The notes: generated by a model from the sequence alone, not told the origin. DNA of 64,000 nucleotides from Euprymna scolopes (GCA_053919585.1 CM132828.1), one strand, 5' to 3'; shown: positions 17,229 to 56,321, numbered from the stretch's first letter. Made by a program: numbers and translations.

Positions 17229-17287
17229 TTTTAAATAAACAGAAAGAAGACTTGCTTTTTTTCTGCTTTGGTCCAAGATCAAAGTGT

Positions 17288-20200
17288 CTAATAGAGTTAA
17301 TTAAAAAGGCACTAGTGGGGCGGTTATCAGGAGTAAGTGGTAGGTGGGTCTTAAATCTAAAATTAGAGGATTCTCTGTCAAGTATTCCAAGCACCTCGCA
17401 CTAGATAAGACCAAGACGAAGAAGCAGCTAGAGCAGAAATTAATCTGGCTACATGGGAGGGAAATAGGGTTTGTCAAGAACTAGCTAAGCAAGACCTTCT
17501 GCGGGAGACTAGTGAGCATTACGAAGGTCAAGTAGAGCTAGGCTTAGAAAGATAGGCAATGAAGCAGTGAACTCTGATGTGGATGTGCATCATGAGGTTT
17601 CTAGGCGTGGCTTGGACAAGTACATTGGTAAAGTCAAACATCTGAATGGATGCACCTTGGAGTTTACTCGAGAGATCTGCGAGGGGTTTCTAGAATATTT
17701 TGAAGAGCATTTTACGCAACATCCCGATCTTCCGATCAACGAGTTTAGTAACGATTTGGCCGACTCTCCCCATCTCGAGGCGTCTAGGGCGGCTAGTTGC
17801 GAGGGCCGGTTGACGTAGTGGGAGATTTTTATTGCGCTAAAGCAGATCAGCTATGACAGATCACCAGGACTTGATGGTTTGCCATACGAACTGTATTTGA
17901 GGCTGTTGCCCATGTTTCTACATCTTCTGACAGATGTGTTCAATCATTGGTTTTCTCAGGAATCCATCCTGGGGCAAGTCATCAAGGGAGTGATCACATT
18001 GCTCAGGAAAGGTGACGGTCATGGTGACGACGAATTAGATGACTACAGGCCCATAACTCTGCGTTTAGCAGAGTTGAAGATTTTGCCCAAGATCTTGTCG
18101 AATCAACTGCAAGTTGTTATTGGCGACTTGATCAAACCAAAACAAAATGACGCTGTGAAGAGGAGATCGATTCAGAACAATTTGCACCTGATCCGCATCA
18201 TCCTAGAGAAGGGATAGGAGATGACACAGAAGTCATGCTGATCAATTTAGATCATTCCAAAGCTTTTGATAGGGTCGGCCATCGCCTCCTGACATCTGTC
18301 TTAGATACTGCCAATTTTAAACTGGACTTCTGCAAGTTGATCTCTGAGATGTATTGCCATCCATGATTGTCGTGCAAGTCAACGGAAAGCACTCGAAACC
18401 CTTTATTATCTCTCAGGTGGTTCATCAGGGTTGTCTGCCGTCACCCCTACTCTACATCCTGGCGTTGGAGCCACTACTCTGCAAGCTAAGACGTGGAGAG
18501 GCAAATTCAGCCCTGCATGGAATAGCTCTACCTGGCGGCTTGGCCACCAAAGTATCCGTGTACACCGATGACGTCACGGTCTTTGTGTTGAGCTTCAGAG
18601 ACATTGAGATTATGTCGGAGGTGTTTGCTCGGTACGAAAGAATTACAGGAGCCAAAATAAACCGCAGCAAGTCGGTCGGACTGTGGTTGGGCACCTGGAG
18701 TGGTTACGCAAATCTACTGGCACCTTTCAGCTGGACAGATGGCCTGGTTTGGGTCCCTGGTGTGTGATTGGGACAGGGTCTCCAGCTCAAAAAGAATTGG
18801 TCGGAGGTATGGTCAAAGGTGGAGGCTGTAGTCAACTTGTGGCTTCCTAGGAAACTTTCCTTAAGAGCCAAGGTGTGCGCCATGTACGTCTTCCTCTAAT
18901 CCTTTACCGACTGGCCATACTTTTCCTGCCTGCACAACACCTAAAAGTTCTTGTCGAACTCTTGTCCTCGCTTCTTTAGAACAAAGGAAGACACTGGGTG
19001 AGCAGACAGGTCTGTATTTAATGTCCTTGTGAGGGAGGCATAGGAATGCCGGACTTGAAGTGTCATTGAGACGCTGAAAAGCTGATATTCCTGAGCCACT
19101 ATCTGCAAGAAGACTAACCATGGTACCCTGCTATTATTGCCGCCCATCCTGATCTTGTTCTTGACCTCTCTGTCGAGAGCCGTTGCAGGCCGCGGAGAGA
19201 ATCTGCCATCCTAAAAGAGTGTCAAGCCACACTAAAATGACTACCAAGGTCCAGCGACCTTAAGACTGCTGCCCATAGGGAACTCCACAGGGATCTAGTG
19301 AGAGGGGGGGGGCTCCCAACTATTCACTAAGCGTGCGTTTGGGTTGGCAGCAGAGTGAGATCCATTCTGTGTGGAGTTGGGCGTCAGATTCGAGTCATCG
19401 GAACAACTTGGAGTTCTCTCTGACCTGGCGATTGGCTCGAAATGCACTTCCTCCAAACAACGTACAATGCAGTTTTGGTTTTTTGGAGTCCTTGTTGCAG
19501 AACAACAGCCATAAAAACGACTGATCACGCTTTCTTTGATTGTCATAAACTCCACCAGTGCTGGTCATATGTTGTTAAAGTGACAGCTCACATTGATCCT
19601 AGGCATCCTTGCCCAATTACCGTATTCAATGTTGTTGACAACGTGAGGCTGGTGTGGTATCAGGAAACACAAATTGTCTACATTACTATTCTGACCGTAG
19701 CAAGAATGGTAATTTGGACGTCGCAACTGCAAGGTGGCCAGAGGGGGTATTGTCCTTTTTTGATCAGTATCTGATCGCTTTCTTTAAACACCAACTACGG
19801 GTGAAGATGAGATTTGATAGAAAGAGGCTGCATCACATGGAATTTGACAGAAGATGGATACACGTAGCAAGTCTGCGCGTGCGAAAACAAACCAAATGTG
19901 AATATGTGTTCCCCATCAAGTGTAATCTAACTTTTAGCCTCTTAGTTTGCCAAGTGAATGCTCCATTCCTTCTCAACTAGGTAGCCTCCAAGATCCTCAC
20001 CCCCTCCTAACTGCAAGTTTTCTTTTCACCCCTCCCTCTAAATTTCACTCATCTTGGAGAAAAAGAAATCTATCACTAACAACCCCTCTCACCCACCAGG
20101 TTTTCTTTTCTCCATTTCATCCCATCTAGAGAGCACCCCCATTTAGAGACTGTCCCACAGGACCTTTACAAACCGAAGTGGAACGGACGGTCTATCAACT

Positions 20201-20547
20201 AGACAAGGTTATGAGGGTCCTACTAACCACTTTAGTATTTTTCCTTCCCTTCCCTCGACACAAATGAATTATTGTATCATTATTGTTATCTTCTTTGTTA
20301 TTTATTACAAATCAATAAAAATCTTTTAAACAATTGAGTTCTAAGTAGGACGCCCCCAAGTACGAAAGGGTGAATGCAGTATTATGGTGAAAGAAGATTC
20401 TAGCTAAGAGAAACTTTTGTTTAGTTCTAGAGTGACAAGCATGACCAACGACCCTCATTTTCCCCCCTTTTGAGTTGGCCTTGTGTCTAAGTGTTTTTTC
20501 ATGTTGAATTACATTGTATTTTTAGCCCGAATAAAATATTTAATATC
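17288..20547 (+). mobile_element. Element A: 5'-truncated Tx1/L1-clade retrotransposon (decayed ORF2 RT + C-terminal zinc region, long type-I 3'UTR)
   Basis: SPGLDGLPYELY, YRPITL, QGCLPSPLLYILALEPL, YTDDV, HAFFDC; 3'UTR ends AATAAAATATTTAATATC just before the U2 motif. Confidence 0.88.
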
Positions 20548-20570
20548 TCAAAGTGTAGTATCTGTTCTTA
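20548..20570 (+). other. U2 snRNA-derived joint motif (branch-point recognition region), representative copy
   Basis: TCAAAGTGTAGTATCTGTTCTTA matches U2 nt ~27-49 as I recall it (UCAAAG form, as in Drosophila U2). Other copies: 24614-24636(-), 29057-29079(+), 32808-32830(-), 35013-35034(+), 40983-41001(+), 42556-42578(+), 48061-48078(-, decayed), 48790-48810(-), 49031-49051(-), 56301-56321(+). Confidence 0.88.
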
Positions 20571-22715
20571 CTACATTTTTTTCTTTGGCACGTGTCAATG
20601 CTGTTCTAGCAACACCTTCTTGTGCCATGAACACATTGATAAGCTTTTTGCGGTAGCGTTCTTTCCGCACCCCCACTTTGTCTTTCTTTGCTCTCTCTCC
20701 CTGCGAGAGGAGGATATGAGCTGTTAATTACGACCTTCCCACGAAGGAGAGTCGGACATTCTTTCCCTCTTGCCTTCAATTAATTCCCCACTCCCTCTCT
20801 CAGTTCTGTCTCCCCTCTTGCAGCTCTCCACTTTGGATGCCATCTCCATGTTGGTCAAAGCCGTGAATTTTGGATTTTATCGCACCCTTTGACTGACCAT
20901 GAAAACCACAGACACTGGAAGAGAGTAAAAGAAGGCAAACCCCAGCATGGAGTTCATGACTCCGCCAAAGGACAACACCCCATATGGGGGAGCAACATTT
21001 AAAAACAAACGAAGGGGCATACTGCCTTGATAATATGGAGGCAAGGGCAGCAGCCGCAAAAGACCGTGGCCGGGGGAAATGCTCCCCACTAGAGCAACTC
21101 CCCTAAAGAGGGAGCTAATTGCAAAACTGATGAGGCATACCCAAGAGGTCCTCCAAACCAACGGGTAGCAGACCCAAAAGATATTACTGGGGGAGAAGCT
21201 CCGCATAAGGGCAACTTCCCCCCAAAAGGAGAAAATTACAAAAAAAAAAAGGCATACCGCCTGGAAGTAAATGTTGGCAATGAGGCAGCTGCCTCAAGAG
21301 ACACAATGAAGGGGGATGCTTCTCCAGAGGGAAGCTTCCCGAAAAAGGGAGCCGTACTGGACACACTCAAGGAGAGCGCGGGAGAATGAGTCTCTAAAGG
21401 GAAACCCATCTCACAAAACACCTTCAAGACAGCAAAAAAAAATCATCCAACCCCACAAAAGACTCCATTACCCAAGTTGTCAGAATAGATCTGCATGGGG
21501 TAAAACTGCTGAAAACAGACTCTCTCTGCAGGAATATAAAGACTTGTACTTCACCAAGTACTAAAAATATATTGAGGGGAATGTCCTCCAGCCAATTCCT
21601 GGGGACTGGGAGGTAATAGAACACCAGGGAAAATCAGCTCAAGAGAGTGAAAAAGGAAGAAATGGCAAAGCTCCTCCAGAAATTGAATATACCCACCAAG
21701 TATATACACCAGAGGAGCTTTCTGATGTTGGACATACTGCTCCCAATAAGGATGAAGCAGAAAGGTTCTCACGCACAGAGCTTAAATGCACAGGAGTCCA
21801 CCAGCTGCTGGAGTACCAGGACAGGAGAAGAACCCAGGTACAAATATTTAATGCTCCTGCTTATCTACACGCAGAACTGATTGGAACCTTCTTCAGTAAG
21901 TTTGGAGAGATGGAGCAAATGAACCTGGCATACTTCAAAAATGGTGTCCACCTGGGAGGCTATACAGTAGCGATGCGGGTAAAAAGAAGAGGGCTTCTTA
22001 GGCATACTAGCAGCAATATCCTTCAAGAAAGCCAACATGATGGTGGTGGTCGAGGGTTAACACCCTCACTGCTGGTTCTGTCAGAAACAGGGCCACATAG
22101 CAAAGAACTGCCCAAAAAAAACATTTCCAAGCCAATCTGCACCACAAGTGAACACAGTTCCAGCAGCGGGGGTGTTGACAACCACTGAAACTATGAAATT
22201 TGCCAACATCAGCCCTTGAGTCAACAAAGCCCAAGGGAACCAAGGATCAGTGAAGTATGGTGGCAAGGCGTAAACGAAAGAACACATATCTCCACCTCAA
22301 CCTCACCACCTACTAAATAGCAGCAACAACAACAACAGTCGCAGCCACAATGACAACAGCAGCAGCAACAATATCAGCAGCAGCAGCGAGAGCAACAATG
22401 GCAACAGCAGCAGCAACAATATCAGCAGCAGCAGTGAGAGCAACAATGGCAACAGCAGCAGCAACAATATCAGCAGCAGCAGTGAGAGCAACAATGGCAA
22501 CAGCAGCAGCAACAATATCAGCAGCAGCAGTGAGAGCAACAATGGCAACAGCAGCAGCAACAATATCAGCAGCAGCAGTGAGAGCAACAATGGCAACAGC
22601 AGCAGCAACAATATCAGTAGCAGCAGTGAGAGCAACAATGGCAACAGCAGCAGCAGCAACCGAAGCAACAACAGCTGTTGCAGCTGAAGCCTTGAAAACA
22701 GCTGCAACAACAACC
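20571..22715 (+). mobile_element. Element B: Tx1-like structured 5'UTR + decayed type-I ORF1
   Basis: ATG at 20899; CCHC knuckle CWFCQKQGHIAKNC at 22070-22111; ends in CAG/CAA-rich repeats. Confidence 0.8.
22350..22650 (+). repeat. 48-bp tandem repeat (~6 copies) in ORF1 tail
   Basis: Unit GCAACAATGGCAACAGCAGCAGCAACAATATCAGCAGCAGCAGTGAGA. Confidence 0.92.
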
Positions 22716-24613
22716 ACTTTGCTGTTTTGGCTTTGGCTGCTGCTATTTTTGCTGCTAAATGATTGTTGTTGCAGCTGTTTTCGTGGCTTTGGCTGAGGCA
22801 GCTATTTTTTTTGCTTCAGCATCTTCAGCTGCTGCTGCTATGGCTGTGGTTTTGGCTGCAGATGCTGTGGAGGCTGCTGTTGTTGTTGCTGCCTTGATTG
22901 TTGGGTTGGTGGTTTGACGTTTGCGGATGGGGTTGTAGGCTTCCGTTTCTGGCTCGTCACCATGCTCCTTTCCTCTCCCTTAACCTCCTGTGATGTTCTG
23001 AATTCACTCGACATTGGGGTTGGTGCTGCGGTTGTAGGAGTGGTGACAGCTTTATTTGATTCTGGTGCTGTCTTGGGGGTTGGGACTGCCTTTGGTGTCA
23101 CTTGAGTCGGGATTGATTTTTTGTGGCAGCTTTGGCCATGTGACTCTGCTTGTGGCAGAACAGCAGTGCGGATGGCAGCCTTCCACCACTACCATCATGC
23201 TGGTGCCCTTGAAGGTCAGCAGTGCTGCTATCACCAGAAATACCTTTCTCTTCAGCCTCATTACCACTGTGTAGCAGCTCAGGTGTATGCTGGTTTTCTA
23301 TTGTACCGGGGCCACCTGCTCCACCTCTACAAATTGGCTGAAGAGGGGGATCCCAGGAGTTCTGATGGTATTTGAGTTGGTATGTTGAATATCTGCACCT
23401 GACTACTTCTTGACCTGGTATTCTGGCATTAATTTGGCTCCTCCATGCTTTATTTCTTTGAGGAAGAGTCTCTCCGCATCCTCCTTGGTGGGTAGGAGGA
23501 TGTTTGACATGACAAAGCTTCTCTGGTACATGCATAGTGTTGGAAAGTTCAATTTGTGAAGGAGCCCCACTATGTCTTCTTTTCCGTCCCTAGGAGACGG
23601 TTTTCTGGTATGTTGGAGGTAACAAAGGACAGGACTCTATCCTCGTCTGGCCCTGGCTTTATTATGTATTGCCTGTACTTGGTAAAGTACAGGTCTTTGT
23701 ACTCTTGAGGGGACAGTTGCTTTTCTGTGGTCTTTCCCCATGCAGACTCTCTTGTTGGTGTTGGTGTTGGTGTTGGATCTGTGGTGGGGCTGGATCGTTC
23801 TTGGGGTTCTTTTTTGGAGGGCATTCCCCTTTCTGCTTTCTTTGGGGACCGACTCTCCTTGGTTGATGTTTCTTCCGGAAACAGCTTCCGTTTTGAGGGA
23901 GTTGGTTTCTTGGGAAGCGTTGCCCTCTTTATTGTCCTTGAGGGCATCTGCCCCTTCATTGTTGTTGAGGTCCAGGTGGTATGCCCCCTCGTTCTTCTGA
24001 TTTGCGCCTCCCAAAAGGACTGCACTTTGGGGCTAGTGCCTCTTTACTGCACTTTGGGGCTAGTGCCTCTTCCTTTGTGTGGTTAGAATGGGATGCCCCG
24101 TTCGACATTGGTTTTTCTCCCCGTTGTTTGGTAGTGTTTTTGCTCCTCCTGGTGGGTAGTTGTATTCTAGAGGAGCAGCTGCTTCTGTGGTGGCCTCCAG
24201 GCTGGAGGTATCCATAGTAGCGACCACCGGGCTGAGGTTGTCTGTCTGAAACTCTTCGGTTCGTGTTCGTCTCAAATGTCGCAAAAACAAGTGATGTGAG
24301 GATAGTGTCAGTAGTGCTGAGTCAAATTTGGTGCCAAAAAGAAGTAGCGCCAAAAGTGATAAAAGGGGAGATAGACCTGAGAGAGGAAGTTGGGAGTTAA
24401 TTGAAGGGCAGAGAGAAAGTGTGTTAGACCCTCCTTCACGGAAAGGTTGGAATTAACAGGTCAGATCCCCCCTCGCAGGGGGAGAGCAGAAAAAGTTAGA
24501 CAAAGTGGGGGTTGCGGACAGAACGCTACTCCAAAAAAGCATGTCACTGTGTTCCGGGCATAAGAATATGTTGCCAGAACAGCACTGCCTTGCGCAAAAG
24601 AAAAAAAATGTAA
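22716..24613 (-). mobile_element. Element C: Tx1-like 5'UTR + decayed type-II ORF1
   Basis: ATG at 24215 (MDTSSLEA), SAWGK..LSPQEYKDLYFTKY block, knuckle remnant ~23125-23170; same leader as B. Confidence 0.8.
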
Positions 24614-24636
24614 TAAGAACAGATACTACACATTGA

Positions 24637-26165
24637 ATTATATATTTTTTATTTACTGTGAAAAATTTACAGCAAAACAGTAATAATCAAAAAATTAGGC
24701 ACAAGGATACTCAAAAATTGGGGAGGGACTGTCTATAGTCATCCTCGTCACTGTACCTTTGCTCGTCTATGCTTGATCCTAGCTAAAGTTCTCATTCACC
24801 ACAATACCTCAAGCACACCGGGAGTCATCCTACCTAAGATTCCCAAATCATTTTGTGTGTGTGTGCGTGTGTGAATATGGATGCTTAGGCGGGGAACACA
24901 AACTCCAACTTGGCAACTCACTATCTTTATCCATCATCGGTCAAAGGCCTTGGGGTACAATCTTTTCCTATCACATCTGATCTTTACCTTCATCTGCTGC
25001 TTGAAGAAAGGGACCAGATCCTGATCAGCAAAAGATTCAACCCCGCGATTCTCTTGCACTCTTGAAATCCATAATCACCATTCTGGCCACAACCAGGATC
25101 GACAGAAACACCATTCATCTCTCTTTGTCCACGGCGGTGCTGTGCTGTGGATAACATAGGACATGTCCAGCAGGCGAGGCTGCTCGGGATCGATGCAAGC
25201 CATCAACTGCTTGACGTACTGTCTGAGTCTGCTGCAAATGAAGAACGCGTGTTGTGGTGTTTCCTGACTTGAGTCCTGCAATGATAACACCCTGGCGACC
25301 TCACTAATCTGGCATTTTTAAGTATAGCATTGAGAGGCAATGGATTTTGGGCCAATCGCCAGGTCAAGAAGAACTCAGTTATTTAGATGACTGGAACCTG
25401 GTGCCAAGCTCCACCAGTAGCAGATCTCCTCCTTCAACAACCCCAGATGCTTAACGAGCAGGTCGTCGGCAGCCCCCTTCACTAGTTCTTTATATAGTTC
25501 CTTTCTAGTCAGCCATGAAAGGTTGCTGGAACTTGGGAGGTTCCTTAGCGCAGCCTTACACTCTCTCTAGAACTGCGTGTTGCTTCAACAAAATGCGCCT
25601 CAACATTGTGGTTGAGGATGAGGTCCAGAAAAAAAGCTTTAACTGTGGGGTTCCATGCATATTATTCTATCAAAATTTGGCTTAGGAAGGCCAACCTCTC
25701 AATGACACCTCGTCGGGCATTCCCAAACCTACATCACACGGACGTTGAACACAGACCTGTCTGCGAACCCAATGTTTCCCTTTGTCCCTAAAAAGTGAGG
25801 TCAACTTGCTCTGTAGGAACTTTAGATAGTTCTCAGGCAGGGGGAGTACAGTCAGTTTGTAAAGGATTAGCGGTAAGACGTAGATAGCACACGCCTCCAC
25901 CCTGCCCTTCAAGGATAGTTTCTTTTGAACCCACAAGTTAAACACGGCTTCGACATTTGACTTTACCTCCGACCAATTCTTTTTCAACTGGAGGTCCAGT
26001 CCAAATGACACGCTGAGGATCTGAACCAGGCCATCAGTCCAGCTGAAGGGAGCGGGAAAGGAGTTGGCGCCCCTCCAGGCTCCCAACCACAGATTGGTCA
26101 ACTTGCTGTGGTTAATTTTGGCCCCTTCCGTCTTTTCATAATGTGTGAGCACCTCCATCGCATAG
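24637..26165 (-). mobile_element. Element D: Tx1-like ORF2 3' portion + type-II 3'UTR
   Basis: GAKINHSK, LWLGAWRG, LSLKGR, ETPQHAFFIC; UTR with (CA)n mirrors 28772-29056. Confidence 0.82.
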
Positions 26166-26169
26166 CTTA

Positions 26170-28768: not shown

Positions 28769-28846
<78 letters not shown>

Positions 28847-29056
28847 TTTGGAATCTTAGGTAGGACAACCCCCGGTGTGCTTGAGGTATTGTGATGAATG
28901 AGAATTTTAGCTATACACAAGCAAAGACTAGCAAAGGTAAAGTATTGAGGATGACTATAGACATGCCCTCCCCAATTTTTGAGTGACCTTGTGCCTAATT
29001 TTTTGTCTATTACTGTTTTATTCTAAACTTTTCAGAGTCAGTAAAAAATATATAAT
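26170..29056 (+). mobile_element. Element E: Tx1-like ORF2 (APE C-terminus, RT) + type-II 3'UTR with (CA)n at 28772-28840
   Basis: GYWKLNTSLL, GLDGFHYELY, LDQSKASDRVDH, GCPLSPLLY, AFADEI; decayed, with internal deletions. Confidence 0.85.
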
Positions 29057-45213: not shown

Positions 45214-48060
45214 CCTATGCTGAGTAAACATCAAACCTATTTACCAGCACCTGACAATCCCCGTCCAAAATAAAGTGGGTCTCCTGAACGATATCTACCT
45301 GGAGAGACACCAGATCTCTCAGCACATGCATGGCTTTGATCAACAGATTTAAACAGTGACACACATGGGACTGAAGTCCCTGGGAGTGAGGACATGGCAG
45401 TCCTGTCCAAGACTGCCTAAAAGCATCCCCCATCCAAGACAAATGTTATCTTGAGTGTCCTGTAAAACGAAAGGTAAACATAAAGAGGAACCCTACCTTT
45501 GCATCACACTGCCAGCTGCTTCAGTGATGAATGCTCATCGTCCACCAGCTGCTGGTTCGGGAATGCCTTCTTACCCTCCTCCACCATGCTTCATAGGGCT
45601 CTGGTTCGGTTGTCCATTTGTCCTCTCACAAATGTGGTCAGCATTGGAACGTCCTTGAACTTTGTGGGGTCCGTCATGCTGTCCCCCTAGACATAAACAA
45701 AGTTTCTTAGTTTGTTGTAAGATGCCTCCTGCTTACCCTTAAAGTCTAGGTAGGCTTGCAGAGGGTCAGTCTCACACTTGTCTCCAGGCTGGAATGGAAG
45801 TTTCTTTGTCCGTTCACTACTGATTGGAGGGACGGGTTTAGGTTTTCCAGGCTCTCCTCTCGCTTTTTGTCAGGAGGCCTATCCTTGGAAGAAGTGTGTG
45901 AAGCGTTTTTTTTTTTTTTGGGGGGGGGGGGTTGTAGGAGGTGGGTAGTCTTCTCAGCTTGAGAGGTGTTTGGGAGCTGAGGTTTTTCCTCCTTCGAAGT
46001 CTTTTCGAAGGGGGTGGGCTGGGAGCTGCCTCCCTGCTCTTCTTATACTTCTTCCTCCCGGTCTTTTCTTTGTTCTCCACCCGAGCCGAGCTATCAATCT
46101 AAACCTCTCCCTCAGATACTGCTTCTTCTTCCGACTCAGGTGGGAAGTCCGGAAGCTTCCATTTGCCCCTATTGTTGGTGTGGCGTCCTCCGTATTCATG
46201 GGTTCACTAGTGCTGGGAGCCTCTTGCTGTTGCTGCCGTTGCTGAAGTTTTTTCTGCTGTTTCTGCTGCTGTTGTTGTTACTGCTGTCATTGCAGCTGCC
46301 GCTGTTGTTGCCAGTGCTGCTGTTGAGTAGGTGATGAGGTTGCAGCAGAGATGAGGGCATTCTTCTGTTTAATCCTCGCTACCATACTCCACTGACTTTT
46401 TGTCACTTCACTGGACTTTATCGATTCTGGGGCTGGAGTCTGTGACTCCTTAACTTCAATAGTGATGGTTGTTGCTGATGCTGTGTTCACTTGTGGTGCT
46501 GGTTAGCTTGGAGCCGTTTTTTTTGGGCAGTTCTTTGCCATGTGGTCCTGTTTCTGACAGAACCAACAATGAGGGTGTTGACCCTCAACAACTTGCTGGT
46601 AGGAAGCCCTCTCTTTTCAACCTTATTGCAACTGTGTAGCTACTCAAGTGAACATCGTTCTGTTTTTGGAGTGTTCGGGTCCACCTACCCCATTTCCCCA
46701 AACTGGCTAAGGAAAGACCTCAATAGTTCTGGAGTATTGAAAATCTGTACTCAGGTTCTCCTCCAACCTGGTACTCCGGCAGCAGCTTGATTCCTCCGCA
46801 TTTAAGCTCCCTGTGTGAGAATTTTTCAACATCGTCTTTGTTAGGGAGCAGTATGTTCCACATTGAAAAGCTCTTCTGATGTATGTACTTGGCAGGTGCA
46901 TTCAGCTGAAAGAGCTCTGCTATCTTCTGCTTTTTCAGACCCCTGAGACTGTTTTCCCAGAGGTCGGAAGTGACAAAAGACAGGATCTTGTCCTTTATCG
47001 CCTCCCGATCTTCTGGTATAAACTTGTGGACGTTCCCCTGAGTATAATCCTTGTACTTTGTAAGGTACAAGTCCTTGTAATCCTGTGGGGAGAGTCTCTT
47101 TTTAATGGTCTTATCCCACGCCCATCCCTCTGATGGCTTGGGGTGAGGGGCTCTTTTGTGGATTTGTTTACTCTCTTGGAGGGTTTTTTGTGAGTCGGAT
47201 TTCAATTTACAGGCCGATTCTTGCATGCTTTCTTTTGATGTGTGCAGGACAGCTCCTTTTTTCAGGCAGCTTCCTTCTGGGGAAGCGTCCCCCCTTAATA
47301 GTGTCTCTGTAGGCAGCTGACTCTGCCAGTGTTTGTTTTCAGGTGGTATGCCTCTTTTCCTGGGAGTTTTCTCCCTTTTTGGGGCAGTTACTCTTTTCGG
47401 ATCTTCTTCCCCGGCAATGTCTTTTAGGGCTGCTGCCTCTTGGTTTCGAAGATCTGTTTGGTGTGCCTCTCGTTTCTGCAGTTTGCCTCCTCCTTAAGGG
47501 AACTGCTCTCATGTGGAGCATCTCCTATGGCCAAGGTCTTTTGTAGCGGTTGCTCCTATCTCTATCTAATCTGGGCGGTACACCCCTTCGTTTTTTGTGT
47601 TGTTCTCCCATTTGGGGAGTCATCCTTTGAGGAAGTCGTCTCTTCTGTGCTGGAGAATGTTGCTGGCATTTCTCTTCTGCCATCTGCAGTCTCCATGGTC
47701 GGTCAAAGGGCAGGTAGAGATAAAGTCCAAAATCACGGTTTTGACTGACGTGGAGACAACGTACAAAGTGGGGAGCCGATTTTGCGCAAAAAAAAAAAAA
47801 AGTGATGCCACAGGTGGCAAGAGGAGGAGATAGAACTGAGAGAGGGAGTGGAGGAAAAAGAGTAAGTCTGTCCGACCCGCCCTCGTGGGAAGGTCGTGGT
47901 TATTACCTTAGATCCTCCCCAGCTCAAAGGGAAAGCAGTGAAGGATAGACAAAGTGGAGGTTGCGGAGAGAATGCTAACCCAAAAAAGCTTGTTAATGTG
48001 TTCCACGTATGAGAATGTGTCGCCAGAAGAGCACTGCCTCACACGAAAGAAAAAATGTAG
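45214..48060 (-). mobile_element. Element M: 5'UTR, ORF1 and ORF2 APE start
   Basis: ATG 47696; LSPQDYKDLYLTKY; APE VDIVQETHF at 45215-45442; leader homologous to B and J. Confidence 0.8.
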
Positions 48061-48270
48061 TAAGAACAGACAGTACACGTAAAGACTACAATTTGTATTA
48101 TTAATGTTATCAATTTTGTCGCAGCTTTCTTTTTTAGATTTAATAAAAAATATCGCTGCATTAAGCGTCCTAAATTATGAGATGAGAAAATGAACAAATC
48201 TCTTTGTAAAAGAGAGTTATCTCCCTTTTCACAGTGAATGATTGTAAAACTGTGCCAACTTAATTTCACA

Positions 48271-48550: not shown

Positions 48551-49051
48551 CGTAGCCAAGAAGCCTTTTTTGTATTTCTTGGATTTTTTGGTATTTATTG
48601 GTATTTATTTGCTTCCTGATAAAATCAAAATGTGACACAAGATCGTTTTTAATGTTGGGGAAAACGAGCTCCACTTAAACGAGGGCAAAAAAGGGTGCAC
48701 TCTGGCAGTATCCAAATAAATAGTAATTGTCTCAGTATGAAGGATTTCCCCTACATTGACCAAGGACTAATTAAGTTAAGTAAAACATCAGAACAGATAC
48801 TACACCTTGAACAACAGAAAAAAAATCAAGCCTTTTTTCTATTTATTGGTATTTATTTGCGTCCCCATGAAAGCTATATGTGACACAAGGTCGTTTTTAA
48901 TGTGAGGGGGAAACCAGCTCCCCAAAAACAAGGGTAAAAAGAGGGCACTCTGGCAGTATACAAAAATTGTAATCGTCTAAGTATGAAGGGTTTCCCCTAC
49001 ATTGACCAAGGACCAATTAAGTGAAACATCAGAACAGATACTACACTTTGA
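48551..49051 (-). mobile_element. Two tandem ~240-260-bp non-coding mini-units, each headed by the U2 motif
   Basis: 48551-48810 and 48811-49051 share CCCCTACATTGACCAAGGAC, CACTCTGGCAGTAT and TGTGACACAAG(A/G)TCGTTTTTAATG. Confidence 0.75.
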
Positions 49052-49182
49052 GGCATCAAATCCTTTATTCAGGTTAAAATACAAACATGAACAAAATTTT
49101 AGGTACGAGGCTAACTCGAAAGATGGAAAAAATGGAGTTCATTGGTCATCCTTATCACTCCAGAACTAAACAAAGGTTCTCT

Positions 49183-50543
49183 TGTGACAAGTACTGTGGA
49201 CCGGACAACGTCGGGTTGTCTTGCTTGTTGCGGAGCAGTCTCCTGGGTGGTCCTTTTAACATGAGTTCAGGAGATTTCACATTGTTGAATCTAAGTGGTG
49301 ATGATAATAAAAAGAATAAATCTGTTTTCTTAATAGATAATCAAAATGCCCCACGCACTGTACCTCTGTTGGGATCATAAATGAAGATTGTAACTCTGTG
49401 GAAAAAGGCCACTTGAGTTTTATTTGACCATCAGGATATGAAGTCAAGTAGTTAAACTGTCCAGTGGTTTTAATTATTGGATTGACCGTGAAATCACTTT
49501 GGAAATAGGGTTAACTATGATGACCGATTCACTTATCCTACTTTATACATATGGTCTTTCGGAGACCACTCCCACGAGTAACAGTAAAGGGTAGAGACAG
49601 AGAGGGAGAGAGAGACAGACAGACAGACACAGAGAGAGAAAGAGAAAGTCCCAAATAGAAAGGGGGCATAAACTAAAAGTTATAGAAATAATGTAAAGAA
49701 ATGCTTTTTAGCAATTGGGGAGAATTTATTGGTGAGGAGAGTCTGTTGTACAGGCCGTTGGACATGTGGTCCAACAGCCTGGCTGAAAAACCTTAATTCA
49801 AACCATTATAATCCTGCACCCAGAAGTCAGTCTGATTTACCAAGCTTATAAAGGCTCCTAGCTCATGTCCTTACTGAGTCTGTACCTGTAACAACATTGA
49901 ATAATTAATGTTACTAAAAAGACTGTCTTTGTGATTTCTTTTGTTGTTGCCTGTGGTTGTGAAATGAATTCTTCCCTAGACCGATGTTTCAAGATGCAGC
50001 AGAGGAGAATGCATCTGCCTGTGAAAGAGGACCTCCTCCTCAATGTCCAACATCAGACGACCAGCTGACGTACCCCTGTGGTAGTTACCGACCAGCGATC
50101 CTGAGAGCAGAACTGTCACATGAACTTAGGGTTATGCACGAGTTGCGTGTTCAAGTAGAAAATCGATGAGTTCCAGCAACCAGCGAGCGTCTGGCATAGA
50201 TATGAAGGTCCTAACCACTAGACAAAGAAAAGATAAAGATAAAAACTAGACGATCAAACCACAACAAGGAGTTATGAATAAGTCTTCACCAGTTTAAAGA
50301 CTTTTAATTCACAAGGAGTTCCAGAGTTAAATGTTCTCAAAAGCTTTTGAAAAGTTTTGAAGATTAAAAGTCGTGCAAAAAGGGTCCAGACGCAAGGTTA
50401 TTGAATGTTATTTGACCGGTATATTGAATTTTATTTTATTTTATTTTCAAAAATGTAGCCTCGAGCCGTTGGGTGTGGGGTTACCTTTAAGGTGCATCCC
50501 AACTCTGCTCCCGGCGACGGACGACGCAGCACATAGGGTTATA
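49183..50543. mobile_element. Probable solo LTR (1.36 kb) interrupting a minus-strand type-I 3'UTR
   Basis: Termini TGTGAC...GTTATA (CA decayed to TA), 4-bp TSD CTCT (49179-49182, 50544-50547); host UTR (49052-49182 + 50548-51180) is continuous when compared with 32941-33060. Confidence 0.72.
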
Positions 50544-51839
50544 CTCTTAGCTAGCACCCTCTTCCAATATAATACCACATTCACCTATTCATATTGGGGA
50601 ACGTCCAACTTAGAACCCAATCATTTAAAACATTTTTTATTGAATTGTAAAAACAAAAACGATAACAATAATGATATTACAATAATTAAATTTGTGTCAA
50701 GAGTGGGGGAGGAGAAAAAAAAAATTATAAAAGTAGCTAGTAGGACCATCCTAATCCCATCTAATTGATAGACCACCTGTTTCACTTCAGTTCGTAAAGG
50801 AACCTGATATCCTGTGAGACAGTCTCTAGGTAGGGGTGCACTCTAGATGGGACGAAAGGGAGAAAAGAAAAATTGGTGGGTAAGGGGGGGATGTTAATGA
50901 TTGATTTCTTTCTCTCCAAAATAGGTGAAAATTAAGGTGGGGGGGGGAGGATTGCAATTAGGAGGGGTTGGAGATCTTGGAGGCTTCCTAGTCGGGGAGG
51001 GATGGGGAACTCACTCGGCTAGCTAAGAGGTTAAAATTAGGATCGGGATGGGTCCAATAGACTCCGGAATTGTGCACTCCACACTTAGGCAGGGAGCACG
51101 TATTCAAATTTGGCTCCTTTTTGTACACACAGACTTGCTATGTGTATCCATCTTCTGTCAAATATGGCGTGATGCAGCCTCGGGGGAGCAACACTTAAAA
51201 ATGAAGGGGCAGGGGTGGTAGTCCCAAAAGACAATGCACAGGAAGATGCTCCCCTAAAGAGGTAGCTAATTGCAAAACTGAGGAGGCACACCCAAGAAGT
51301 ATTTCAAACCAAGGGGCAGCAGCCTGAAAAGACATTACCAAAGAAGCTCCCTGTGAGAGCAGCTTCCCTCAAAAAGGGAGAAAATGATCAAAAAGAAGAG
51401 GCATACCGCCTAGAAATGAATACTGGCAAAGAAGCAGCTGCCTCAAGAGACACGGTGGAGGGAGATGTTCCCTAAAAAAGGGAACAGTACTGGACACACT
51501 CAAGGAGAGTGCGGGAAAATCAGCCTCTAAAGGCAAACCCGTCTCATGAAACACCTATAAGACAGCAAAACCATCATCCAACCCCATAAAAGACCCCTCG
51601 CCAAGCCATCAGAAGGATCTGCATGGGGTAAAACCATTGAAAAGAGACTCGCTACAGAAATATAAAGACTTGTACCTTACCAAGTACAAGGAATATATTG
51701 AGGGGAACATCCTCAAGCCAATACCTGGGGACTGAGAGGCAATGGAGGACAAGGTCCTATCCTTCGTCACTTCGGACATCAGGGAAAATTGGCTGAAAGG
51801 AGTGAAAAGAAAGAAATGACAGAGCATCTCCAGAAACTG

Positions 51840-54800
51840 GTAACATTAACTAACTACGCGGGGTCACAGAAATACCTGGATTAGAACCCAGGCATGGAGC
51901 AAACCCTCTCAGTACTGACGGACTCAGTAGATCTTCCCAGATCATCTGTCTAGGAGAAGGAAAACTCTGAAACTAAACCAAAGGGGAGGGAGGCCTCTTC
52001 AGTCTTGGATGATAACCTTCCTAGAGCTGGTGACTCAAACAAATTACCGGTTTGCAAACCTAATTTGCTTAAGGAGTAGATAGGTTTTGTCTATTGCCCA
52101 GCTTCCATACTCCTTCTTTGCCTATTAGTCAGGCGCAGAGACACTATCACAGTGATTCGACAGAAACACCCAGTGGTAGATCTTGTTTCTTGTCTAGGGC
52201 AACGAATGCCGTTTCCCAACTCCCGACACACCCCACCCCTAAAACTGGGCACTTGAGAGTGCTTGAGTACCACATATGCCTGAGCAATTAGATTTGGTTG
52301 ACCTTCCTCTGATGGGTTGAGGGTACCGGATTGACAGTTACTGGCTGCTGTTTCCGACTGGTAGTACAAGAGCCCTGACTCTTTGGTAGCGCTTAGAGTG
52401 GCTGCTCCATCAACAGTTATATAATATCGGGATGTTTGTAGTGCCATGTCGCGCATGGAAAGGGACCCTGCACTCATCCCCGGTGGGCTTTCCTGAGGCC
52501 ACAGTCCTAGTTGAAGAAGGGTCAGCTGATGGTCTACTTGTGATGCATGTGTGATACTCTGCATAACCTCCTGTTCAACTCCCCCTTACCTAACTAAAAC
52601 TCGTAAAAAAAAATATGATGACAGTACAATCTAAAAATAAGCTTAAACCAGGCTTAGGGTCAAACAAATCCAACTTTCCTCCTCCCTTGAGGCTTGCATT
52701 CACAAATATCCGTGGGCTTAGAACTAATTTAGCTGATGTTGAAGCATTTCTCCTAACAAATACCCTGGATATCTTAGCGCTAAGTGAGACTAACCTACAC
52801 TCCTCTATCCCTTCTAACTACTTTAACATGCCTGGATATCTCCCACTCTGCCGTAAGGACTCTGACAGACACATGCACGGACTTGGAGTTTACATTCGTA
52901 ATACCCTTCCCTTGACTAGAGAAACAAACCTAGAATCGGATGATCAAACCTTTATGTGCAACACAACGTTAACTACTTTTACTTTCTCTACCGCTCTCCC
53001 TTGACCCAAGACTGCACCATAATAAACAAAGTCTCTGACAGCATAGACACAGCACTCTCCATCGACACTAGCGCCCAAGTACATGTATTTGGTGACTTTA
53101 ATGTCCATCACAAAAACTGGCTTGGATTCTCTACTTACACAGATGCAGCAGGCAGCACAACTCATAGCTTCTCTATATCTCACCCCCTATCACAAATTGT
53201 TACTTTTCCAACCCGTTTCCCTGACCAGGAAGAATAACACGCATCACTTTTAGATCTGTTTTTGACCACAGTTCCTGATTGTATAACGAATGCCGACAAC
53301 CCACTTGGGAATGCTGATCATGCAGTGATAATGGTTGAAATCGCCCTAAACTCTAGAGCCAAAACTGAAGAGCCAGTGCTCAAAACAACGAGATATTATA
53401 AAAAGGCTGACTTGGAAGCCATTAGAGATCTTATCAGAGATGCCCCATGGGGAAATATCTTTTCTCTTCCTGCTGAACAGTGTGCAAACGAGACCACTGA
53501 ATGGTTCAAAACTGCAATCAAAGCGCATGTTCCCATGCGGAAATTTTATAGCAAGCCCCACTCTCCCCAACGGTTTACTTCGACCTGTGCAACTGCCACT
53601 GCTCAAAGGCAGCATGCATACCGCAAACTTAACCGACATAAGTCCAATTCAAACAGACAGAAGTACATAGAAGCTAGAAGTAACGTTAAGAAAGAAATAG
53701 TGACAGCTAAGAGAGAATTTATGGAAACCACTAAAAAACGCATAGAAGCACAAAAACTAGGAACTCGTGACTTCTGCAAAATCTACAACAGTGTAGTAAA
53801 TAATGGGCAATCAACAATTCCCCCACTAACCAACAATCACGAGGTTGTTTGCTCAGCAACCAAAAAGGCTAACATGCTTGCCAGTCGATTTGCCTCAAAC
53901 TCCAAACTGGACCTTTCCAACCACCCCCTACCTGAATTTCCTATGTGGACGGACGCCACGCTAGACGATCTACAAATCACCCCTGCTCAAGTACATGCTA
54001 TCATAAAAAATCTTGACACTTCAAAAGCATGTGGACCCGACCTCATCCCAGCTGTGCTATTAAAAATGTGCGCAGCTGAAGTAGCTCCAGTTCTCTCCAA
54101 ACTCTACAACAAATATCTTAATGAATCTTGTTTTCCGGGCTGTTAGAAAACTGCTTCTGTGGTACCAGTATTCAAGAATTCTGGCGAAAGAACTGACCCA
54201 TTAAATTATCGCCCCATTAGCCTCCTCCCACTTTTTGCCAAAATATTTGAGACCTTAATCAACCATGCTCTAGTCCGTCACCTTACAGATGCTAAGCTTC
54301 TGACTGACAAACAATATGGATTTAGACAAGCCCGTTCCACAGCAGACATTCTAACTGTAATCTCTGAACAGATATACTATTCACTGGACAAAGCGGGGGA
54401 GTGCAGAGTGGTAGCTCTAGATATATCTAAGGCTTTTGACAGGGTATGGCATGAGGGTCTCCTCAGGAAGATTAGATCATACGGTATCACTGGTAGAATA
54501 CTTAGCATAATTAAATCCTTCTTAGATAAGAGAAAAATCCAGATTGTCCTCAACGGTCGTACATCTAAACAATATGATATAAATGCGGGAGTGCCCCAGG
54601 AGTCTATCCTTGGACCTCTGCTGTTCCTGATATTCATAAATGACCTCCCCGACAAAATTGACTCTGACATGGGTATATATGCTGATGACACCACACTCTA
54701 TAACAGACACGACAGGAAAACAAATGAACACATATCTAAAGAAATGGCAAAAACTCTAGAAGATGACCTCCAATCTGTAGTGGAATGGGGACAAAAATGG

Positions 54801-55580
54801 ATGGTCACGTTCAATGCCGCCAAGTCTAAACTAGTTTCATTCAATAATTACAAGAAACCTTTTCTACCACCTATAGCAATGGCCAACGACTCTTTATCTG
54901 AGAGCACGTCTTTCAAGCTCCTTGGTCTAACGTTCACAGGAAACATGAGTTGGAACAATTACATCGAGGGCATTGCCAGGAAGGTGGGCTCTCTCTACCG
55001 TGCTAGAAAACTACTAACACCCAAAAGTATCCTATACCTCTATAAGGCAACCATTCACCCATGTATGGAGTATTGCTGTCATATTTGGGCTGGTGCATTG
55101 GCTACTAGTCTCGCTCCTTGACAAGGTTCAAAAGAGAGTCGCAAATCTGATAGGCTCTGAACTGGCATCTAAGCTTCAGCCTCTGTCCCATCCACGAAAC
55201 GTTGCATCCCTCTACCTGTTCTACAAGTATTATAATGGTGAATGCTCTGATGAACTGCAAGCACTTGTGCCTCCACGCCGTGAACACCCTCGACAGACCC
55301 GACAGGCTGCAAAATCCCACCCCCACATTGTAGAAGTCCCCAGATGTAAAAGATCTTTCTACTCCAGTAGTTTCTTCCCCAGAACCGCTAGACTTTGGAA
55401 TTCCATTCCAGGTCCCTGCTTCCCCAACTGTACTGACGTTCAGTTCAAGTGCAACGTGAACCGACATCTTGCTGCCCAAATCCCTACATAGTACCCCAGT
55501 AGTTGTTGCCCCTGTTAGTAGCCCCCTACACCAAAGTGGCAATGTGCCTTGTATGAGGTGAAAATGTAATAAAAAAAAAA
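51840..55580 (+). mobile_element. Near full-length single-ORF LINE of the CR1/L2 group
   Basis: ~770-bp leader, APE-RT ORF, short 3'UTR and A-tail ending ~55580. Confidence 0.88.
52615..55490 (+). pseudogene. APE endonuclease-reverse transcriptase ORF with few lesions
   Basis: TNIRGL, LALSETNL, GDFNVHH, ADHAVI; ACGPDLIP, NYRPISLL, LDISKAFDRVWH, GVPQESILGP, YADDT, EYCCHIW; about 4 stops/frameshifts. Confidence 0.92.
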
Positions 55581-56321
55581 TACTTGCCAAGTATATACAC
55601 GAGAGGAGCTTTGCGATGTGGGACATACTGTTTCCCAATAATGACAAAGCAAAACGGTTCTCATGCAGAGAGCTTAAATGTGCAAGATTCAACCTACTGC
55701 AGGAGCACCAGGGTTAGAGGAGAACCCGGGTACAAATATTTAATGCTCCTGCTGATCTACACACAAAACCACTGGGAGCCTTGCTCAGTAAGTTTGGAGA
55801 AGTAGAGCAGATGGACCTGGCATGCTCCAAAAACGATGTCCACCTGTCAAGCTATACAGTAGCAATGCAGGTGAAAAGAGAGGGCTTCCTAGGCATACCA
55901 GCAGCAATAGCCTTCAAGGAAGCCAAAATGGTGGTCGAGAGTCAACGCCCTCACAGCTCGTTTTGTTAGAAACCGGGCTACATGCCAAAGAACTGCCTCA
56001 AAAAAGCGGTTCTAAGCCAATTTGTACCACAAGTAAACACAGTTCCAGCAGCGGGGTGGCGACAGCCATTCAAACTAAGGGATCATCTTCAGCCCTTGAG
56101 TCGACAAAATGCAAGGAGACCAAGGATTAGTGGAGTAGTTGCAGGACGTAAACGGAAGAACACATCTATCTCCAAAAAAATAAGAAAAAGGCAAGCCTTT
56201 TTTCTTTCTTGATCTTTGGGACAAGATTGTGCATAAATTTTTTGTTCTCTTTTAGTTTAAGTTGTATTTTTATTAACCTGGATAAAAGATTTAATACCTT
56301 AAAGTGTAGTATCTGTTCTTA

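What the first reader, a model, noticed from the sequence alone, without database searches (positions are those of the whole stretch)
17275..56321. A U2 snRNA branch-point-recognition fragment is the shared joint of a multi-family retrotransposon train
Seen: TCAAAGTGTAGTATCTGTTCT(TA) occurs at least 11 times (20548, 24614, 29057, 32808, 35013, 40983, 42556, 48061, 48790, 49031, 56301). It almost always sits exactly between the A-rich/AATAAA 3' end of one element and the 5' leader of the next, in the same orientation. The elements joined belong to different families: three ORF1 types, two long 3'UTR types, ORF1-only derivatives and non-coding mini-units. No intact U2 gene is present. Established: this is the GUAGUA region of U2 snRNA, and Keno (Tx1 clade) and Utopia elements insert site-specifically in this part of U2. 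Inference: a guild of U2-targeting Tx1 elements duplicates a ~21-23-bp target at each insertion, or carries it, so each insertion leaves a fresh landing pad and arrays can grow independently of real U2 genes.
Basis: partly seen in the sequence, partly recalled or inferred. Interest (0 to 1): 0.92.

Follow-up and report, generated by a model that had tools for sequence, protein, structure and literature searches.

The report
U2-fragment joints in a LINE array
A 40-kb graveyard of dead LINE retrotransposons is stitched together by a 21-23-base piece of U2 spliceosomal RNA, best explained as the duplicated target site of U2-targeting elements that kept inserting next to each other, a known way to build arrays seen here in a new lineage and at a new position in U2.

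Summary
The 21-mer TCAAAGTGTAGTATCTGTTCT occurs 10 times with at most 2 mismatches (0 expected). There is also a degenerate copy at 48064-48084 and a 13-nt U2 match at 17275-17287. It equals U2 snRNA nt ~27-47/49.

Each copy sits between a LINE 3' end and a LINE 5' leader, or a 220-bp mini-unit. The elements are decayed L1/Tx1-group LINEs with APE and RT domains and a zinc-knuckle ORF1.

Three 3'-end types, three ORF1 types and the mini-unit combine in seven ways around the constant joint. The joint is 4% diverged from its consensus against 17-22% for the flanks. Related LINEs elsewhere share the 3' box and leader but have other joints.

The best reading is repeated site-specific insertion with a 21-23-bp target-site duplication, as described for R1 tandem arrays.

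Corrections:
- The joints lie on both strands (6 plus, 5 minus).
- Four joints are two pairs copied by a 6.5-kb-arm palindrome.
- All copies are dead.
- The 3' junction lies 12 nt upstream of the published Keno/Utopia site.
- Tx1/Keno membership could not be tested.
- Growth independent of U2 genes is not shown.

This is a new variant of a known kind, of moderate interest.

The parts
17275..17287 (+). J0, the left edge of the array. AAGATCAAAGTGT equals U2 nt ~23-35. It extends 4 nt (AAGA) beyond the usual joint into U2-specific sequence and directly abuts a 5'-truncated element.
   Evidence: unique exact match. Similarity to U2 nt 1-22 further upstream is weak (p~0.03).
17288..20547 (+). 5'-truncated LINE: decayed ORF2 aa ~274-1140 plus 3'UTR type A.
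   Evidence: RVT_1
20548..20570 (+). Joint J1 (21/21, followed by TA).
20571..22659 (+). Leader, ORF1 type 1 and an internal 48-bp repeat. It ends at a tail-to-tail breakpoint.
22660..24613 (-). ORF1 type 2 plus leader, on the minus strand.
24614..24636 (-). Joint J2 (1 mismatch).
24637..26173 (-). ORF2 aa ~698-1140 plus 3'UTR type B. It ends at the palindrome centre.
26202..29056 (+). ORF2 aa ~173-745 and 975-1137 plus 3'UTR type B.
29057..29079 (+). Joint J3 (1 mismatch), the palindromic duplicate of J2.
29080..32807 (.). Leader plus ORF1 type 2 on the plus strand, meeting ORF1 type 1 plus leader on the minus strand tail-to-tail near 31000. This is the duplicate of 20571-24613.
32808..32830 (-). 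Joint J4 (21/21), the palindromic duplicate of J1.
32831..33798 (-). 3'UTR type A plus the end of ORF2. This is the outer end of the palindrome arm.
33799..35011 (+). Internally deleted remnant: low-complexity inter-ORF region, RT aa ~584-743, and the last ~110 bp of 3'UTR type A.
35012..35034 (+). Joint J5 (1 mismatch).
35035..40982 (+). The most complete element (5.95 kb), bounded by joints on both sides. It holds the leader, ORF1 type 3, a low-complexity repeat, an ORF1b-like piece and ORF2 aa 3-543. An intruding ORF1 fragment (39309-40023) follows, then ORF2 aa ~1045-1140 and 3'UTR type A.
40983..41003 (+). Joint J6 (2 mismatches).
41004..42555 (+). ORF1-only (HAL1-like) unit of 1.55 kb: leader, ORF1 type 1 and the short 3'UTR type C. 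It is bounded by joints on both sides.
42556..42578 (+). Joint J7 (1 mismatch).
42579..45218 (+). Leader, the 5' part of ORF1 type 2, and ORF2 aa ~104-730. It ends at a tail-to-tail breakpoint.
45426..48060 (-). ORF1b-like piece, ORF1 type 1 and leader, on the minus strand.
48064..48084 (-). Joint J8, degenerate (16/21). The upstream 3'UTR type B fragment (48292-48529) is separated from it by (TA)n and a ~200-bp insert.
48585..48789 (-). Mini-unit 2, a non-coding unit of ~205 bp with a LINE-like 3' box.
48790..48810 (-). Joint J9 (1 mismatch).
48811..49030 (-). Mini-unit 1 (220 bp), bounded by joints on both sides. It carries CGACCTTGTGTCACA, which resembles the LINE 3' box, and AATAAA signals.
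49031..49051 (-). Joint J10 (21/21).
49052..51181 (-). 3'UTR type A, interrupted by a 1.36-kb insert at 49184-50543.
51249..56298 (+). ORF1-only unit with 3'UTR type C (51249-51839 and 55587-56298), split by a nested, unrelated APE+RT LINE at 51840-55586.
56299..56321 (+). Joint J11 (1 mismatch).
56322..64000 (+). Leader and ORF1 type 2. The element's internal 51-bp repeat is expanded to more than 96 copies and runs off the window.

Best explanation
The region is an old, dead array of site-specific L1/Tx1-group LINEs and their non-autonomous derivatives. These LINEs have an APE endonuclease, an RT and an ORF1 with a CCHC knuckle. The derivatives are ORF1-only units and a 220-bp mini-unit sharing the LINE 3' box. 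Their target is the most conserved stretch of U2 snRNA.

Inferred mechanism. The endonuclease nicks the bottom strand between U2 nt 26 and 27 (AAGA|TCAAAG) and reverse transcription is primed there. The top strand is cut 21-23 nt downstream, after GTTCT or GTTCTTA. Every insertion is therefore flanked by two copies of U2 nt 27-47/49. Each copy still holds the recognition sequence, so later insertions of any subfamily land beside earlier ones. This gives head-to-tail units separated by exactly the duplicated 21-23-mer, as described for R1 tandem arrays.

The array was probably seeded in a U2 gene or pseudogene, whose 5' side survives as AAGATCAAAGTGT at 17275-17287. Afterwards the array was reshaped by an inverted segmental duplication (a palindrome with 6.5-kb arms), by further inversions and deletions, by a nested foreign LINE, and by expansion of an internal 51-bp repeat.

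What is shown: the joint's U2 identity, its exact position between element ends, the variable partners, its excess conservation, its absence from related LINEs, and the rearrangements. What is inferred: the nick positions, the TSD origin of the joint, and seeding in a U2 gene.
For: (1) There are 10 near-perfect copies, one degenerate copy and one partial copy, against 0 expected.
(2) The joint is identical to U2 nt ~27-49 in the AAAG variant.
(3) The joint's boundaries are sharp while its partners vary. On the 5' side there are four kinds of 3' end (A, B, C, mini). On the 3' side there is the leader or the mini-unit. Seven different combinations of 3'-end type and downstream ORF1/mini type occur.
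(4) The joint is a conservation island. It shows 7 changes in 168 positions (4%), against 17-22% in the 60-115 columns on either side. Pairwise identity is 92% against 69-70%. This fits diverged subfamilies entering a constant target and does not fit amplification of one composite unit.
(5) All joint mismatches are private singletons, so each copy decayed independently from the same 21-mer.
(6) Three units start immediately after one joint and end immediately before the next: the 5.95-kb element, the 1.55-kb ORF1-only unit and the 220-bp mini-unit.
(7) Related LINEs from other assemblies have a homologous 3' box, an AATAAA end and a homologous leader. In place of the U2 piece they have a different short joint, and they also form head-to-tail arrays. 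The joint is therefore a swappable, target-like module.
(8) At the left edge the U2 match extends 4 nt beyond the joint and abuts a 5'-truncated element.
(9) The ORF2 remnants map collinearly onto an APE-RT-zf ORF2 that aligns end to end with human L1 ORF2p at E=6e-72.
(10) Precedent: R1 copies in tandem are separated by the 14-bp 28S TSD, explained by insertion into the TSD (PMC2718515). The double-insertion model is set out in PMC5932611.
Against: No solitary insertion in an intact U2 gene is visible, so the TSD is inferred and not observed. No U2 nt 50-188 flank occurs anywhere in the window. Similarity to U2 nt 1-22 left of 17275 is weak (p~0.03). Four of the joints are two duplicated pairs, and J7/J11 may be a third pair, so independent junction events number about 7-8 and not 11. 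All copies are 65-88% identical and non-coding, so activity cannot be judged. Within the palindrome arms the joints changed less than the arms did (2 changes in 42 columns against about 8 expected). Plain neutral decay after insertion does not predict this. No copy of this family with the U2 joint was found outside the window.
Confidence: 0.65

Rival explanations
1. The U2-like 21-23-mer, or its first 13 nt, is carried by the element RNA and not duplicated from the target. One route is read-through or co-transcription of flanking target sequence that is then used for annealing during target-primed reverse transcription. Another is a terminal segment acquired once from U2. The staggered cut could then be short, for example at the Keno site GTA|TCTG with only an 8-10-bp duplication. 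Arrays would still form because the endonuclease recognises the motif.
For: The final sequence is indistinguishable from a 21-23-bp TSD. Every unit in an array is followed by a joint, so read-through transcripts would carry it. The published Keno/Utopia 3' junction lies inside the motif (PMC6136364). Crocodilian Tx1 families and SINEU carry U2-derived 5' sequences (PMC4494074). Mismatches are somewhat more frequent in the first 13 nt (7 in 130) than in the last 8 nt (1 in 80).
Against: By homology with relatives that lack the motif, the elements end at ...AATATC or ...AACC, immediately before TCAAAG. A carried segment should diverge among subfamilies as the rest of the UTR does, but it is 4-5 times better conserved. 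Template switching to U2 snRNA would add U2 from nt 1, not nt 27-49. The 7/130 against 1/80 difference looks too small to be significant; no test was run.
Confidence: 0.17
2. Only one or two junctions were ever made by insertion. The rest of the array arose by unequal crossing-over, segmental duplication and inversion of composite units, followed by deletions that created the apparent families.
For: An inverted duplication with 6.5-kb arms copies two joints. J7 and J11 are collinear over about 2 kb. J9 and J10 are a tandem duplicate. There are six orientation switches without joints. Relatives occur as near-identical tandem units, 99.6% identical in L003/L004.
Against: Seven different partner combinations surround the joint. 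3'-end types A, B and C and ORF1 types 1, 2 and 3 differ by far more than deletions, being largely unalignable at the nucleotide level. The joint is 92% conserved pairwise against about 69% for the flanks, which neutral decay of one amplified composite cannot give.
Confidence: 0.1
3. The joint is maintained by selection or conversion because the array has a function, such as a safe-harbour landing site or a U2-like RNA decoy.
For: The joint is a conservation island. It changed less than the surrounding palindrome arms (p~0.01-0.02).
Against: The excess conservation is largely explained by a constant target combined with diverged subfamilies. Of all 21-nt windows in the arm alignment, 2.4% are also identical. 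All coding capacity is lost. There is no evidence of transcription or function.
Confidence: 0.04

Closest known systems
Keno (U2 snRNA-specific Tx1-clade LINEs of vertebrates, lancelet and Hydra; Kojima & Fujiwara 2004, as cited in PMC4640811 and PMC4494074)
   Same: It is an APE-type two-ORF LINE that inserts in one orientation into the conserved 5' region of U2 around GUAGUA. ORF2 has L1/Tx1 architecture.
   Different: The 3' junction here is |TCAAAGTGTAG (U2 26|27). The published Keno 3' flank starts at TCTGTTCTTATCAG, 12 nt further downstream (PMC6136364). The joints here are bare 21-23-mers in an array without U2 genes. The host is probably a mollusc, since named relatives are cephalopod. 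RT phylogeny was not done.
Utopia (U2-specific RLE-type non-LTR elements; PMC4640811)
   Same: It has the same target region. Reptile families make 20-bp TSDs, and occasional tandem insertion in U2 genes is reported.
   Different: Utopia has one ORF with a restriction-like endonuclease. Here there is an N-terminal APE domain and an ORF1. The 3' junction also differs.
R1 tandem arrays in Drosophila (PMC2718515; PMC5932611)
   Same: Head-to-tail copies of a site-specific APE LINE are separated by exactly the target-site duplication (14 bp, or 33 bp in the D. melanogaster X array). This is explained by re-insertion into the duplicated target and later expansion. Arrays can lie outside functional target genes.
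   Different: The target is U2 and not 28S. Several subfamilies share one array, together with ORF1-only and mini non-autonomous partners. The joint is longer.
HAL1 ('half-L1') and LINE-dependent SINEs sharing a 3' tail
   Same: ORF1-only units (41004-42555; 51249-56298) and the 220-bp mini-unit keep the LINE ends or 3' box and occupy the same target.
   Different: Mobilisation in trans is inferred only from their position between joints. No promoter or young copies were seen.

Membership tests
Keno / Tx1 clade | ORF2 with an N-terminal APE endonuclease, RT and a C-terminal zinc-finger region; ORF1 with a CCHC knuckle | tested here: met
   ORF2 remnants map collinearly to aa 3-1140 of related intact ORF2s that carry PF03372, PF00078 and PF13966. 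The relative aligns with human L1 ORF2p over residues 5-858 at E=6e-72. The ORF1 translation at 31311-31838 shows C-x2-C-x4-H at its end, and the completing Cys follows the printed ORF. This shows the L1/Tx1 group only.
Keno / Tx1 clade | RT-domain phylogeny places the element inside Tx1, next to Keno | not testable with these tools
   No labelled Tx1, Keno or L1-clade reference set was available. Named relatives are only 'hypothetical protein' entries from Argonauta, Muraenolepis, Branchiostoma and Pinctada.
Keno / Tx1 clade | 3' junction at the Keno site, with 3' flank TCTGTTCTTATCAGTTTAAT | tested here: not met
   All 10 clean joints begin at TCAAAG, 12 nt upstream. By homology with motif-less relatives the elements end just before it.
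Keno / Tx1 clade | Copies flanked by U2 snRNA gene sequence on both sides | tested here: inconclusive
   Only U2 nt 27-49 lies between elements, and nt 23-35 at 17275-17287. No nt 50-188 is present anywhere.
Utopia | Single ORF with a C-terminal PD..D/ExK restriction-like endonuclease and no APE domain | tested here: not met
   The APE domain and a separate ORF1 are present.
TSD-joined tandem array of a site-specific LINE (R1 type) | Head-to-tail units separated by a constant short piece of the target and nothing else | tested here: met
   The joint is 21-23 nt and lies exactly between the 3' end and the next 5' end in 10 copies.
TSD-joined tandem array of a site-specific LINE (R1 type) | The units are independent insertions, differing in subfamily, truncation or structure | tested here: met
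   There are seven partner combinations, plus a 5'-truncated element, ORF1-only units and mini-units. Two or three pairs are duplicates.
TSD-joined tandem array of a site-specific LINE (R1 type) | The joint equals the TSD of solitary insertions in the native target | not testable with these tools
   There is no solitary insertion in the window. The host genome is not available, and two metagenome scans found nothing.

The most novel reading that the evidence does not exclude
This LINE clade escapes dependence on its host-gene target by building its own landing pads. Internal 21-23-mer joints would be fully competent targets, so a guild of autonomous, ORF1-only and mini elements propagates inside self-made arrays far from U2 genes. 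Sister lineages would have switched to other joints (TCGTCGACAACC.., AGCCAACCTCGC..) and built their own arrays. That would make target switching and the birth of LINE-derived satellites two sides of one process.
Probability: 0.2. Interest if true: 0.6.

Novelty: new variant of a known kind. Interest (0 to 1): 0.42.

Why it matters
U2-specific LINEs (Keno, Utopia) and TSD-joined tandem arrays (R1) are both established. This locus combines the two in what is probably a mollusc lineage, with a cleavage position 12 nt away from the published one. If the inferred cut sites hold, a different register of the same invariant U2 segment has been adopted as a target. That makes a useful comparison for how APE endonucleases acquire sequence specificity.

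The array also shows autonomous, ORF1-only and mini elements sharing one target. Relatives with homologous ends but other joints offer a natural series for studying target switching and the origin of LINE-derived tandem repeats. The practical value is for repeat annotation: these bare U2 21-mers are retrotransposon joints, not U2 pseudogenes.

Tried and rejected
- An ORF1 homology search with the 175-aa ORF1 piece found nothing.
- Source names gave no Tx1 or Keno label, so clade assignment by annotation failed.
- Rfam searches at permissive thresholds found no further U2 pieces and did not recognise a U2 5' half left of 17275. My own alignment of U2 nt 1-26 there scores no better than 3.4% of random window segments, so I treat only the 13-nt exact match as evidence.
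- RNAalifold on the conserved 3' box from 11 copies and relatives predicted no consensus hairpin. The box is a linear motif as far as these data show.
- The U2 motif is absent from all five related loci fetched. Two exact-pattern scans of JGI metagenome contigs, one for joint plus leader and one for 3' end plus joint, gave no hit.
- Two related contigs could not be read because the sample file is too large.
- Twin priming was considered for the orientation switches and rejected. Both arms at the 26190 centre carry their own 3' ends and joints, so this is a palindromic duplication.
- Template switching to U2 snRNA was considered as the source of the joint and rejected, because it would add U2 from nt 1.
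- ARAGORN found no tRNA in the tRNA-like stretch near 17070-17170.


Full report
**Observation**

The 21-mer TCAAAGTGTAGTATCTGTTCT occurs 10 times with 0-2 mismatches, and none is expected in shuffled sequence. Six copies are on the plus strand (20548, 29057, 35012, 40983, 42556, 56299). Four are on the minus strand (24616, 32810, 48790, 49031).

It is degenerate (16 of 21), and its upstream partner has been pushed away by (TA)n and a ~200-bp insert.

A twelfth, partial copy opens the region. AAGATCAAAGTGT at 17275-17287 is unique in the window.

The window holds no U2 gene and no other U2 fragment, even at permissive thresholds. There are no N runs.

**Identity of the motif**

Aligned to the Rfam U2 model, the motif and the two bases after it cover UCAA-GUGUAGUAUCUGUUCUUA, with one extra A. 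That extra A is a natural U2 variant. A published U2 primer pair reads CAAAGTGTAGTATCTGTTCTTATCAGC, and its reverse primer is the complement of TCTCGGCCTTTTGGCTAAG (PMC3464664). The joint therefore equals U2 nt ~27-47. In the leader-type junctions it continues through nt 49 (TA).

**What the joint connects**

In every oriented copy the upstream side is the end of a 3' UTR. An AATAAA signal lies 8-15 nt before the joint, there is no poly(A), and about 60-90 nt upstream there is a conserved box (CCCC...TTTGAGTTGGCCTTGTGCCTAA).

The downstream side in 9 of 11 copies is one conserved leader (TAC.ACATTTTTTTC...GCTGTTCTGG...) that runs into an ORF1. In the other two copies it is a 220-bp non-coding mini-unit.

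tblastn with intact ORF1 and ORF2 proteins of related elements maps the coding remnants:
- ORF2 pieces collinear with aa 3-1140 of an APE-RT-zinc-finger protein.
- ORF1 pieces with a CCHC knuckle.
- A low-complexity repeat between the two ORFs.

All are broken by stops and frameshifts. The longest ORF2-derived open frame is 191 aa.

The closest intact relatives come from ENA assemblies and are about 50% identical over the best 150 aa. One of them aligns with human L1 ORF2p over residues 5-858 at E=6e-72. Their only named relatives are a cephalopod (Argonauta hians), fish, lancelet and a bivalve. The nested foreign LINE's best named hit is also a cephalopod. The host is therefore probably a mollusc, but this is not established.

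**Families around the joint**

Pairwise comparison of the flanks gives these groups:

| Feature | Type | Junctions |
|---|---|---|
| 3' end | A | J1, J4, J5, J6, J10 |
| 3' end | B | J2, J3, J8 |
| 3' end | C | J7, J11 |
| 3' end | mini-unit end | J9 |
| ORF1 body | type 1 | J1, J4, J6, J8 |
| ORF1 body | type 2 | J2, J3, J7, J11 |
| ORF1 body | type 3 | J5 |

There is one leader family, 73-88% identical.

The joint is thus flanked by seven different combinations: A|1, A|3, A|mini, B|2, B|1, C|2 and mini|mini.

Three units begin right after one joint and end right before the next:
- a 5.95-kb near-complete element (35035-40982);
- a 1.55-kb ORF1-only unit (41004-42555);
- a mini-unit (48811-49030).

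**Not a simple train**

Self-comparison shows that 19616-26173 and 26202-33798 are the arms of a palindrome. The aligned span, 19616-25368 against 27874-33798, is 79.5% identical counting substitutions only. The arms meet at a ~30-bp centre. Consequently J1/J4 and J2/J3 are duplicated pairs and not separate insertions.

J7/J11 are collinear over about 2 kb and may be another pair. J9/J10 belong to a tandem duplicate.

There are six orientation switches, near 22.5, 26.19, 31.0, 33.8, 45.3 and 51.2 kb. Those inspected carry no joint, so they are rearrangement breakpoints.

A different, nearly intact LINE is nested in one ORF1-only unit at 51840-55586. I count about 7-8 independent junction events.

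**Is the joint interior to an element or target-derived?**

Four results favour a target-derived joint.

1. Partners recombine freely around it.

2. It is a conservation island. It shows 7 changes in 168 positions (4%), against 17-22% in the flanks. Pairwise identity is 92% against 69-70%. All mismatches are private singletons. Diverged subfamilies entering one constant sequence predict this pattern. Amplification and neutral decay of a single composite unit do not.

3. Related LINEs keep a homologous 3' box, an AATAAA...ATC/ACC end and a homologous leader. Between them they have a different short sequence: TCGTCGACAACC.. in L003/L004 and AGCCAACCTCGC.. in L002. None of the five related loci contains the U2 motif. 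Those relatives are themselves head-to-tail arrays of full-length units, with periods of 7.55, 6.59 and about 6.8 kb. The L003 units are 99.6% identical.

4. At the left edge the U2 match runs 4 nt (AAGA) beyond the joint's usual boundary. It stops at GTGT, directly against an element truncated at about ORF2 aa 274. This is what a 5'-truncated insertion into a U2-derived target with a small target deletion would leave. Similarity to U2 nt 1-22 further left is only suggestive.

**Mechanism**

The best explanation is site-specific target-primed reverse transcription into U2. The bottom-strand nick would fall at 26|27 and the top-strand cut 21-23 nt downstream, duplicating the target. Each duplicate remains a target, so further insertions stack head to tail with only the 21-23-mer between them.

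This is the mechanism inferred for tandem R1 elements, which are separated by their 14-bp 28S TSD (PMC2718515). It was generalised as double insertion followed by unequal exchange (PMC5932611). Occasional tandem insertion in U2 genes is also noted for Utopia (PMC4640811).

The nick positions and the TSD origin are inferences. A variant in which part of the joint comes from read-through RNA cannot be excluded from this window. Nor can the window show whether internal joints, as opposed to the U2-flanked array ends, were ever reused.

One small anomaly remains. Inside the palindrome the joints changed less than the arms (2 changes in 42 columns against about 8 expected). Only 2.4% of 21-nt windows of the arm alignment are identical. 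This may be chance or rate heterogeneity.

**Comparison with known systems**

Keno (Tx1, APE) and Utopia (RLE) both target this part of U2. Their published 3' flank begins at TCTGTTCTTATCAG (PMC6136364; PMC4640811). Here the 3' flank begins 12 nt upstream, at TCAAAG.

The elements are not Utopia, because they have an APE domain and an ORF1. Whether they are Keno relatives with a shifted cut, or a separate acquisition of U2 specificity within the L1/Tx1 group, needs an RT phylogeny with reference sequences that I did not have. L1-Tx1 elements are reported as part of the ancient coleoid repeat set (PMC8967140). I found no report of U2 targeting in molluscs.

**Verdict**

It is over-stated on the number of independent insertions, on uniform orientation, on Tx1 membership and on independence from U2 genes. 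The array-building principle is already known. I rate the finding a new variant of a known kind, of moderate interest.

Noticed in passing
window 19616-26173 and 26202-33798: A large palindrome with arms of about 6.5 kb. Over the aligned span 19616-25368 / 27874-33798 the arms are 79.5% identical counting substitutions only, and they meet at a ~30-bp centre where two truncated ORF2 copies lie head to head. It duplicates two joints and a tail-to-tail breakpoint.
   Followed up: partly
window 22343-22659 and 58266-64000: The low-complexity stretch after the ORF1 zinc knuckle is tandemly expanded. There are 48 bp x 6.6 copies at 98% matches inside an otherwise old element, and 51 bp x more than 96 copies running off the window end. 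An internal LINE repeat is turning into a satellite.
   Followed up: partly
L002; L003/L004 (one contig, merged); the P0285 locus (no DNA): Related LINEs in other assemblies form head-to-tail arrays of full-length units, with periods of 7.55, 6.59 and about 6.8 kb. The L003 units are 99.6% identical, and the protein clusters have hundreds of members. Their short joints are not U2, and their targets are unidentified.
   Followed up: partly
window 51840-55586; also 10580-11033: A different, nearly intact APE+RT LINE is nested in an ORF1-only unit. Its ORFs are 129, 294, 320 and 132 aa, and its best named relative is from the cuttlefish Acanthosepion pharaonis at 58%. A 3' fragment of the same LINE (78% identical) lies at 10580-11033.
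   Followed up: partly
window 11141-11245: A 5S rRNA-like sequence (48.3 bits, above the Rfam threshold) lies about 100 bp downstream of the LINE 3' fragment and a (TA)n tract. Whether it is a gene, a pseudogene or a SINE head was not determined.
   Followed up: no
window 1151-2151, 3226-6366, 9508-10520: AT-rich satellites: a 100-bp unit x 10 at 99% matches, and a 136-138-bp unit present in both orientations. GC content is 19-30% here against 44-49% in the LINE array.
   Followed up: no
window, about 60-90 nt upstream of each joint; mini-units 48585-49030; L002, L003, L004: A 3' box (CCCC...TTTGAGTTGGCCTTGTGCCTAA) is conserved across all 3'UTR types, the mini-unit and distant relatives. RNAalifold finds no consensus hairpin. 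The core GGCCTTGTGCCTAA resembles U2 nt 11-25 (GGCCTTTTGGCTAAG); this is probably coincidence.
   Followed up: partly
window 17060-17170: A tRNA-like stretch (GGTTCGAGCC box) lies just left of the array edge. ARAGORN calls no tRNA.
   Followed up: partly
joints J1/J4 and J2/J3: Within the palindrome the joints show 2 changes in 42 aligned columns, against about 8 expected from arm divergence. This hints at constraint, conversion or low mutability (p~0.01-0.02).
   Followed up: partly
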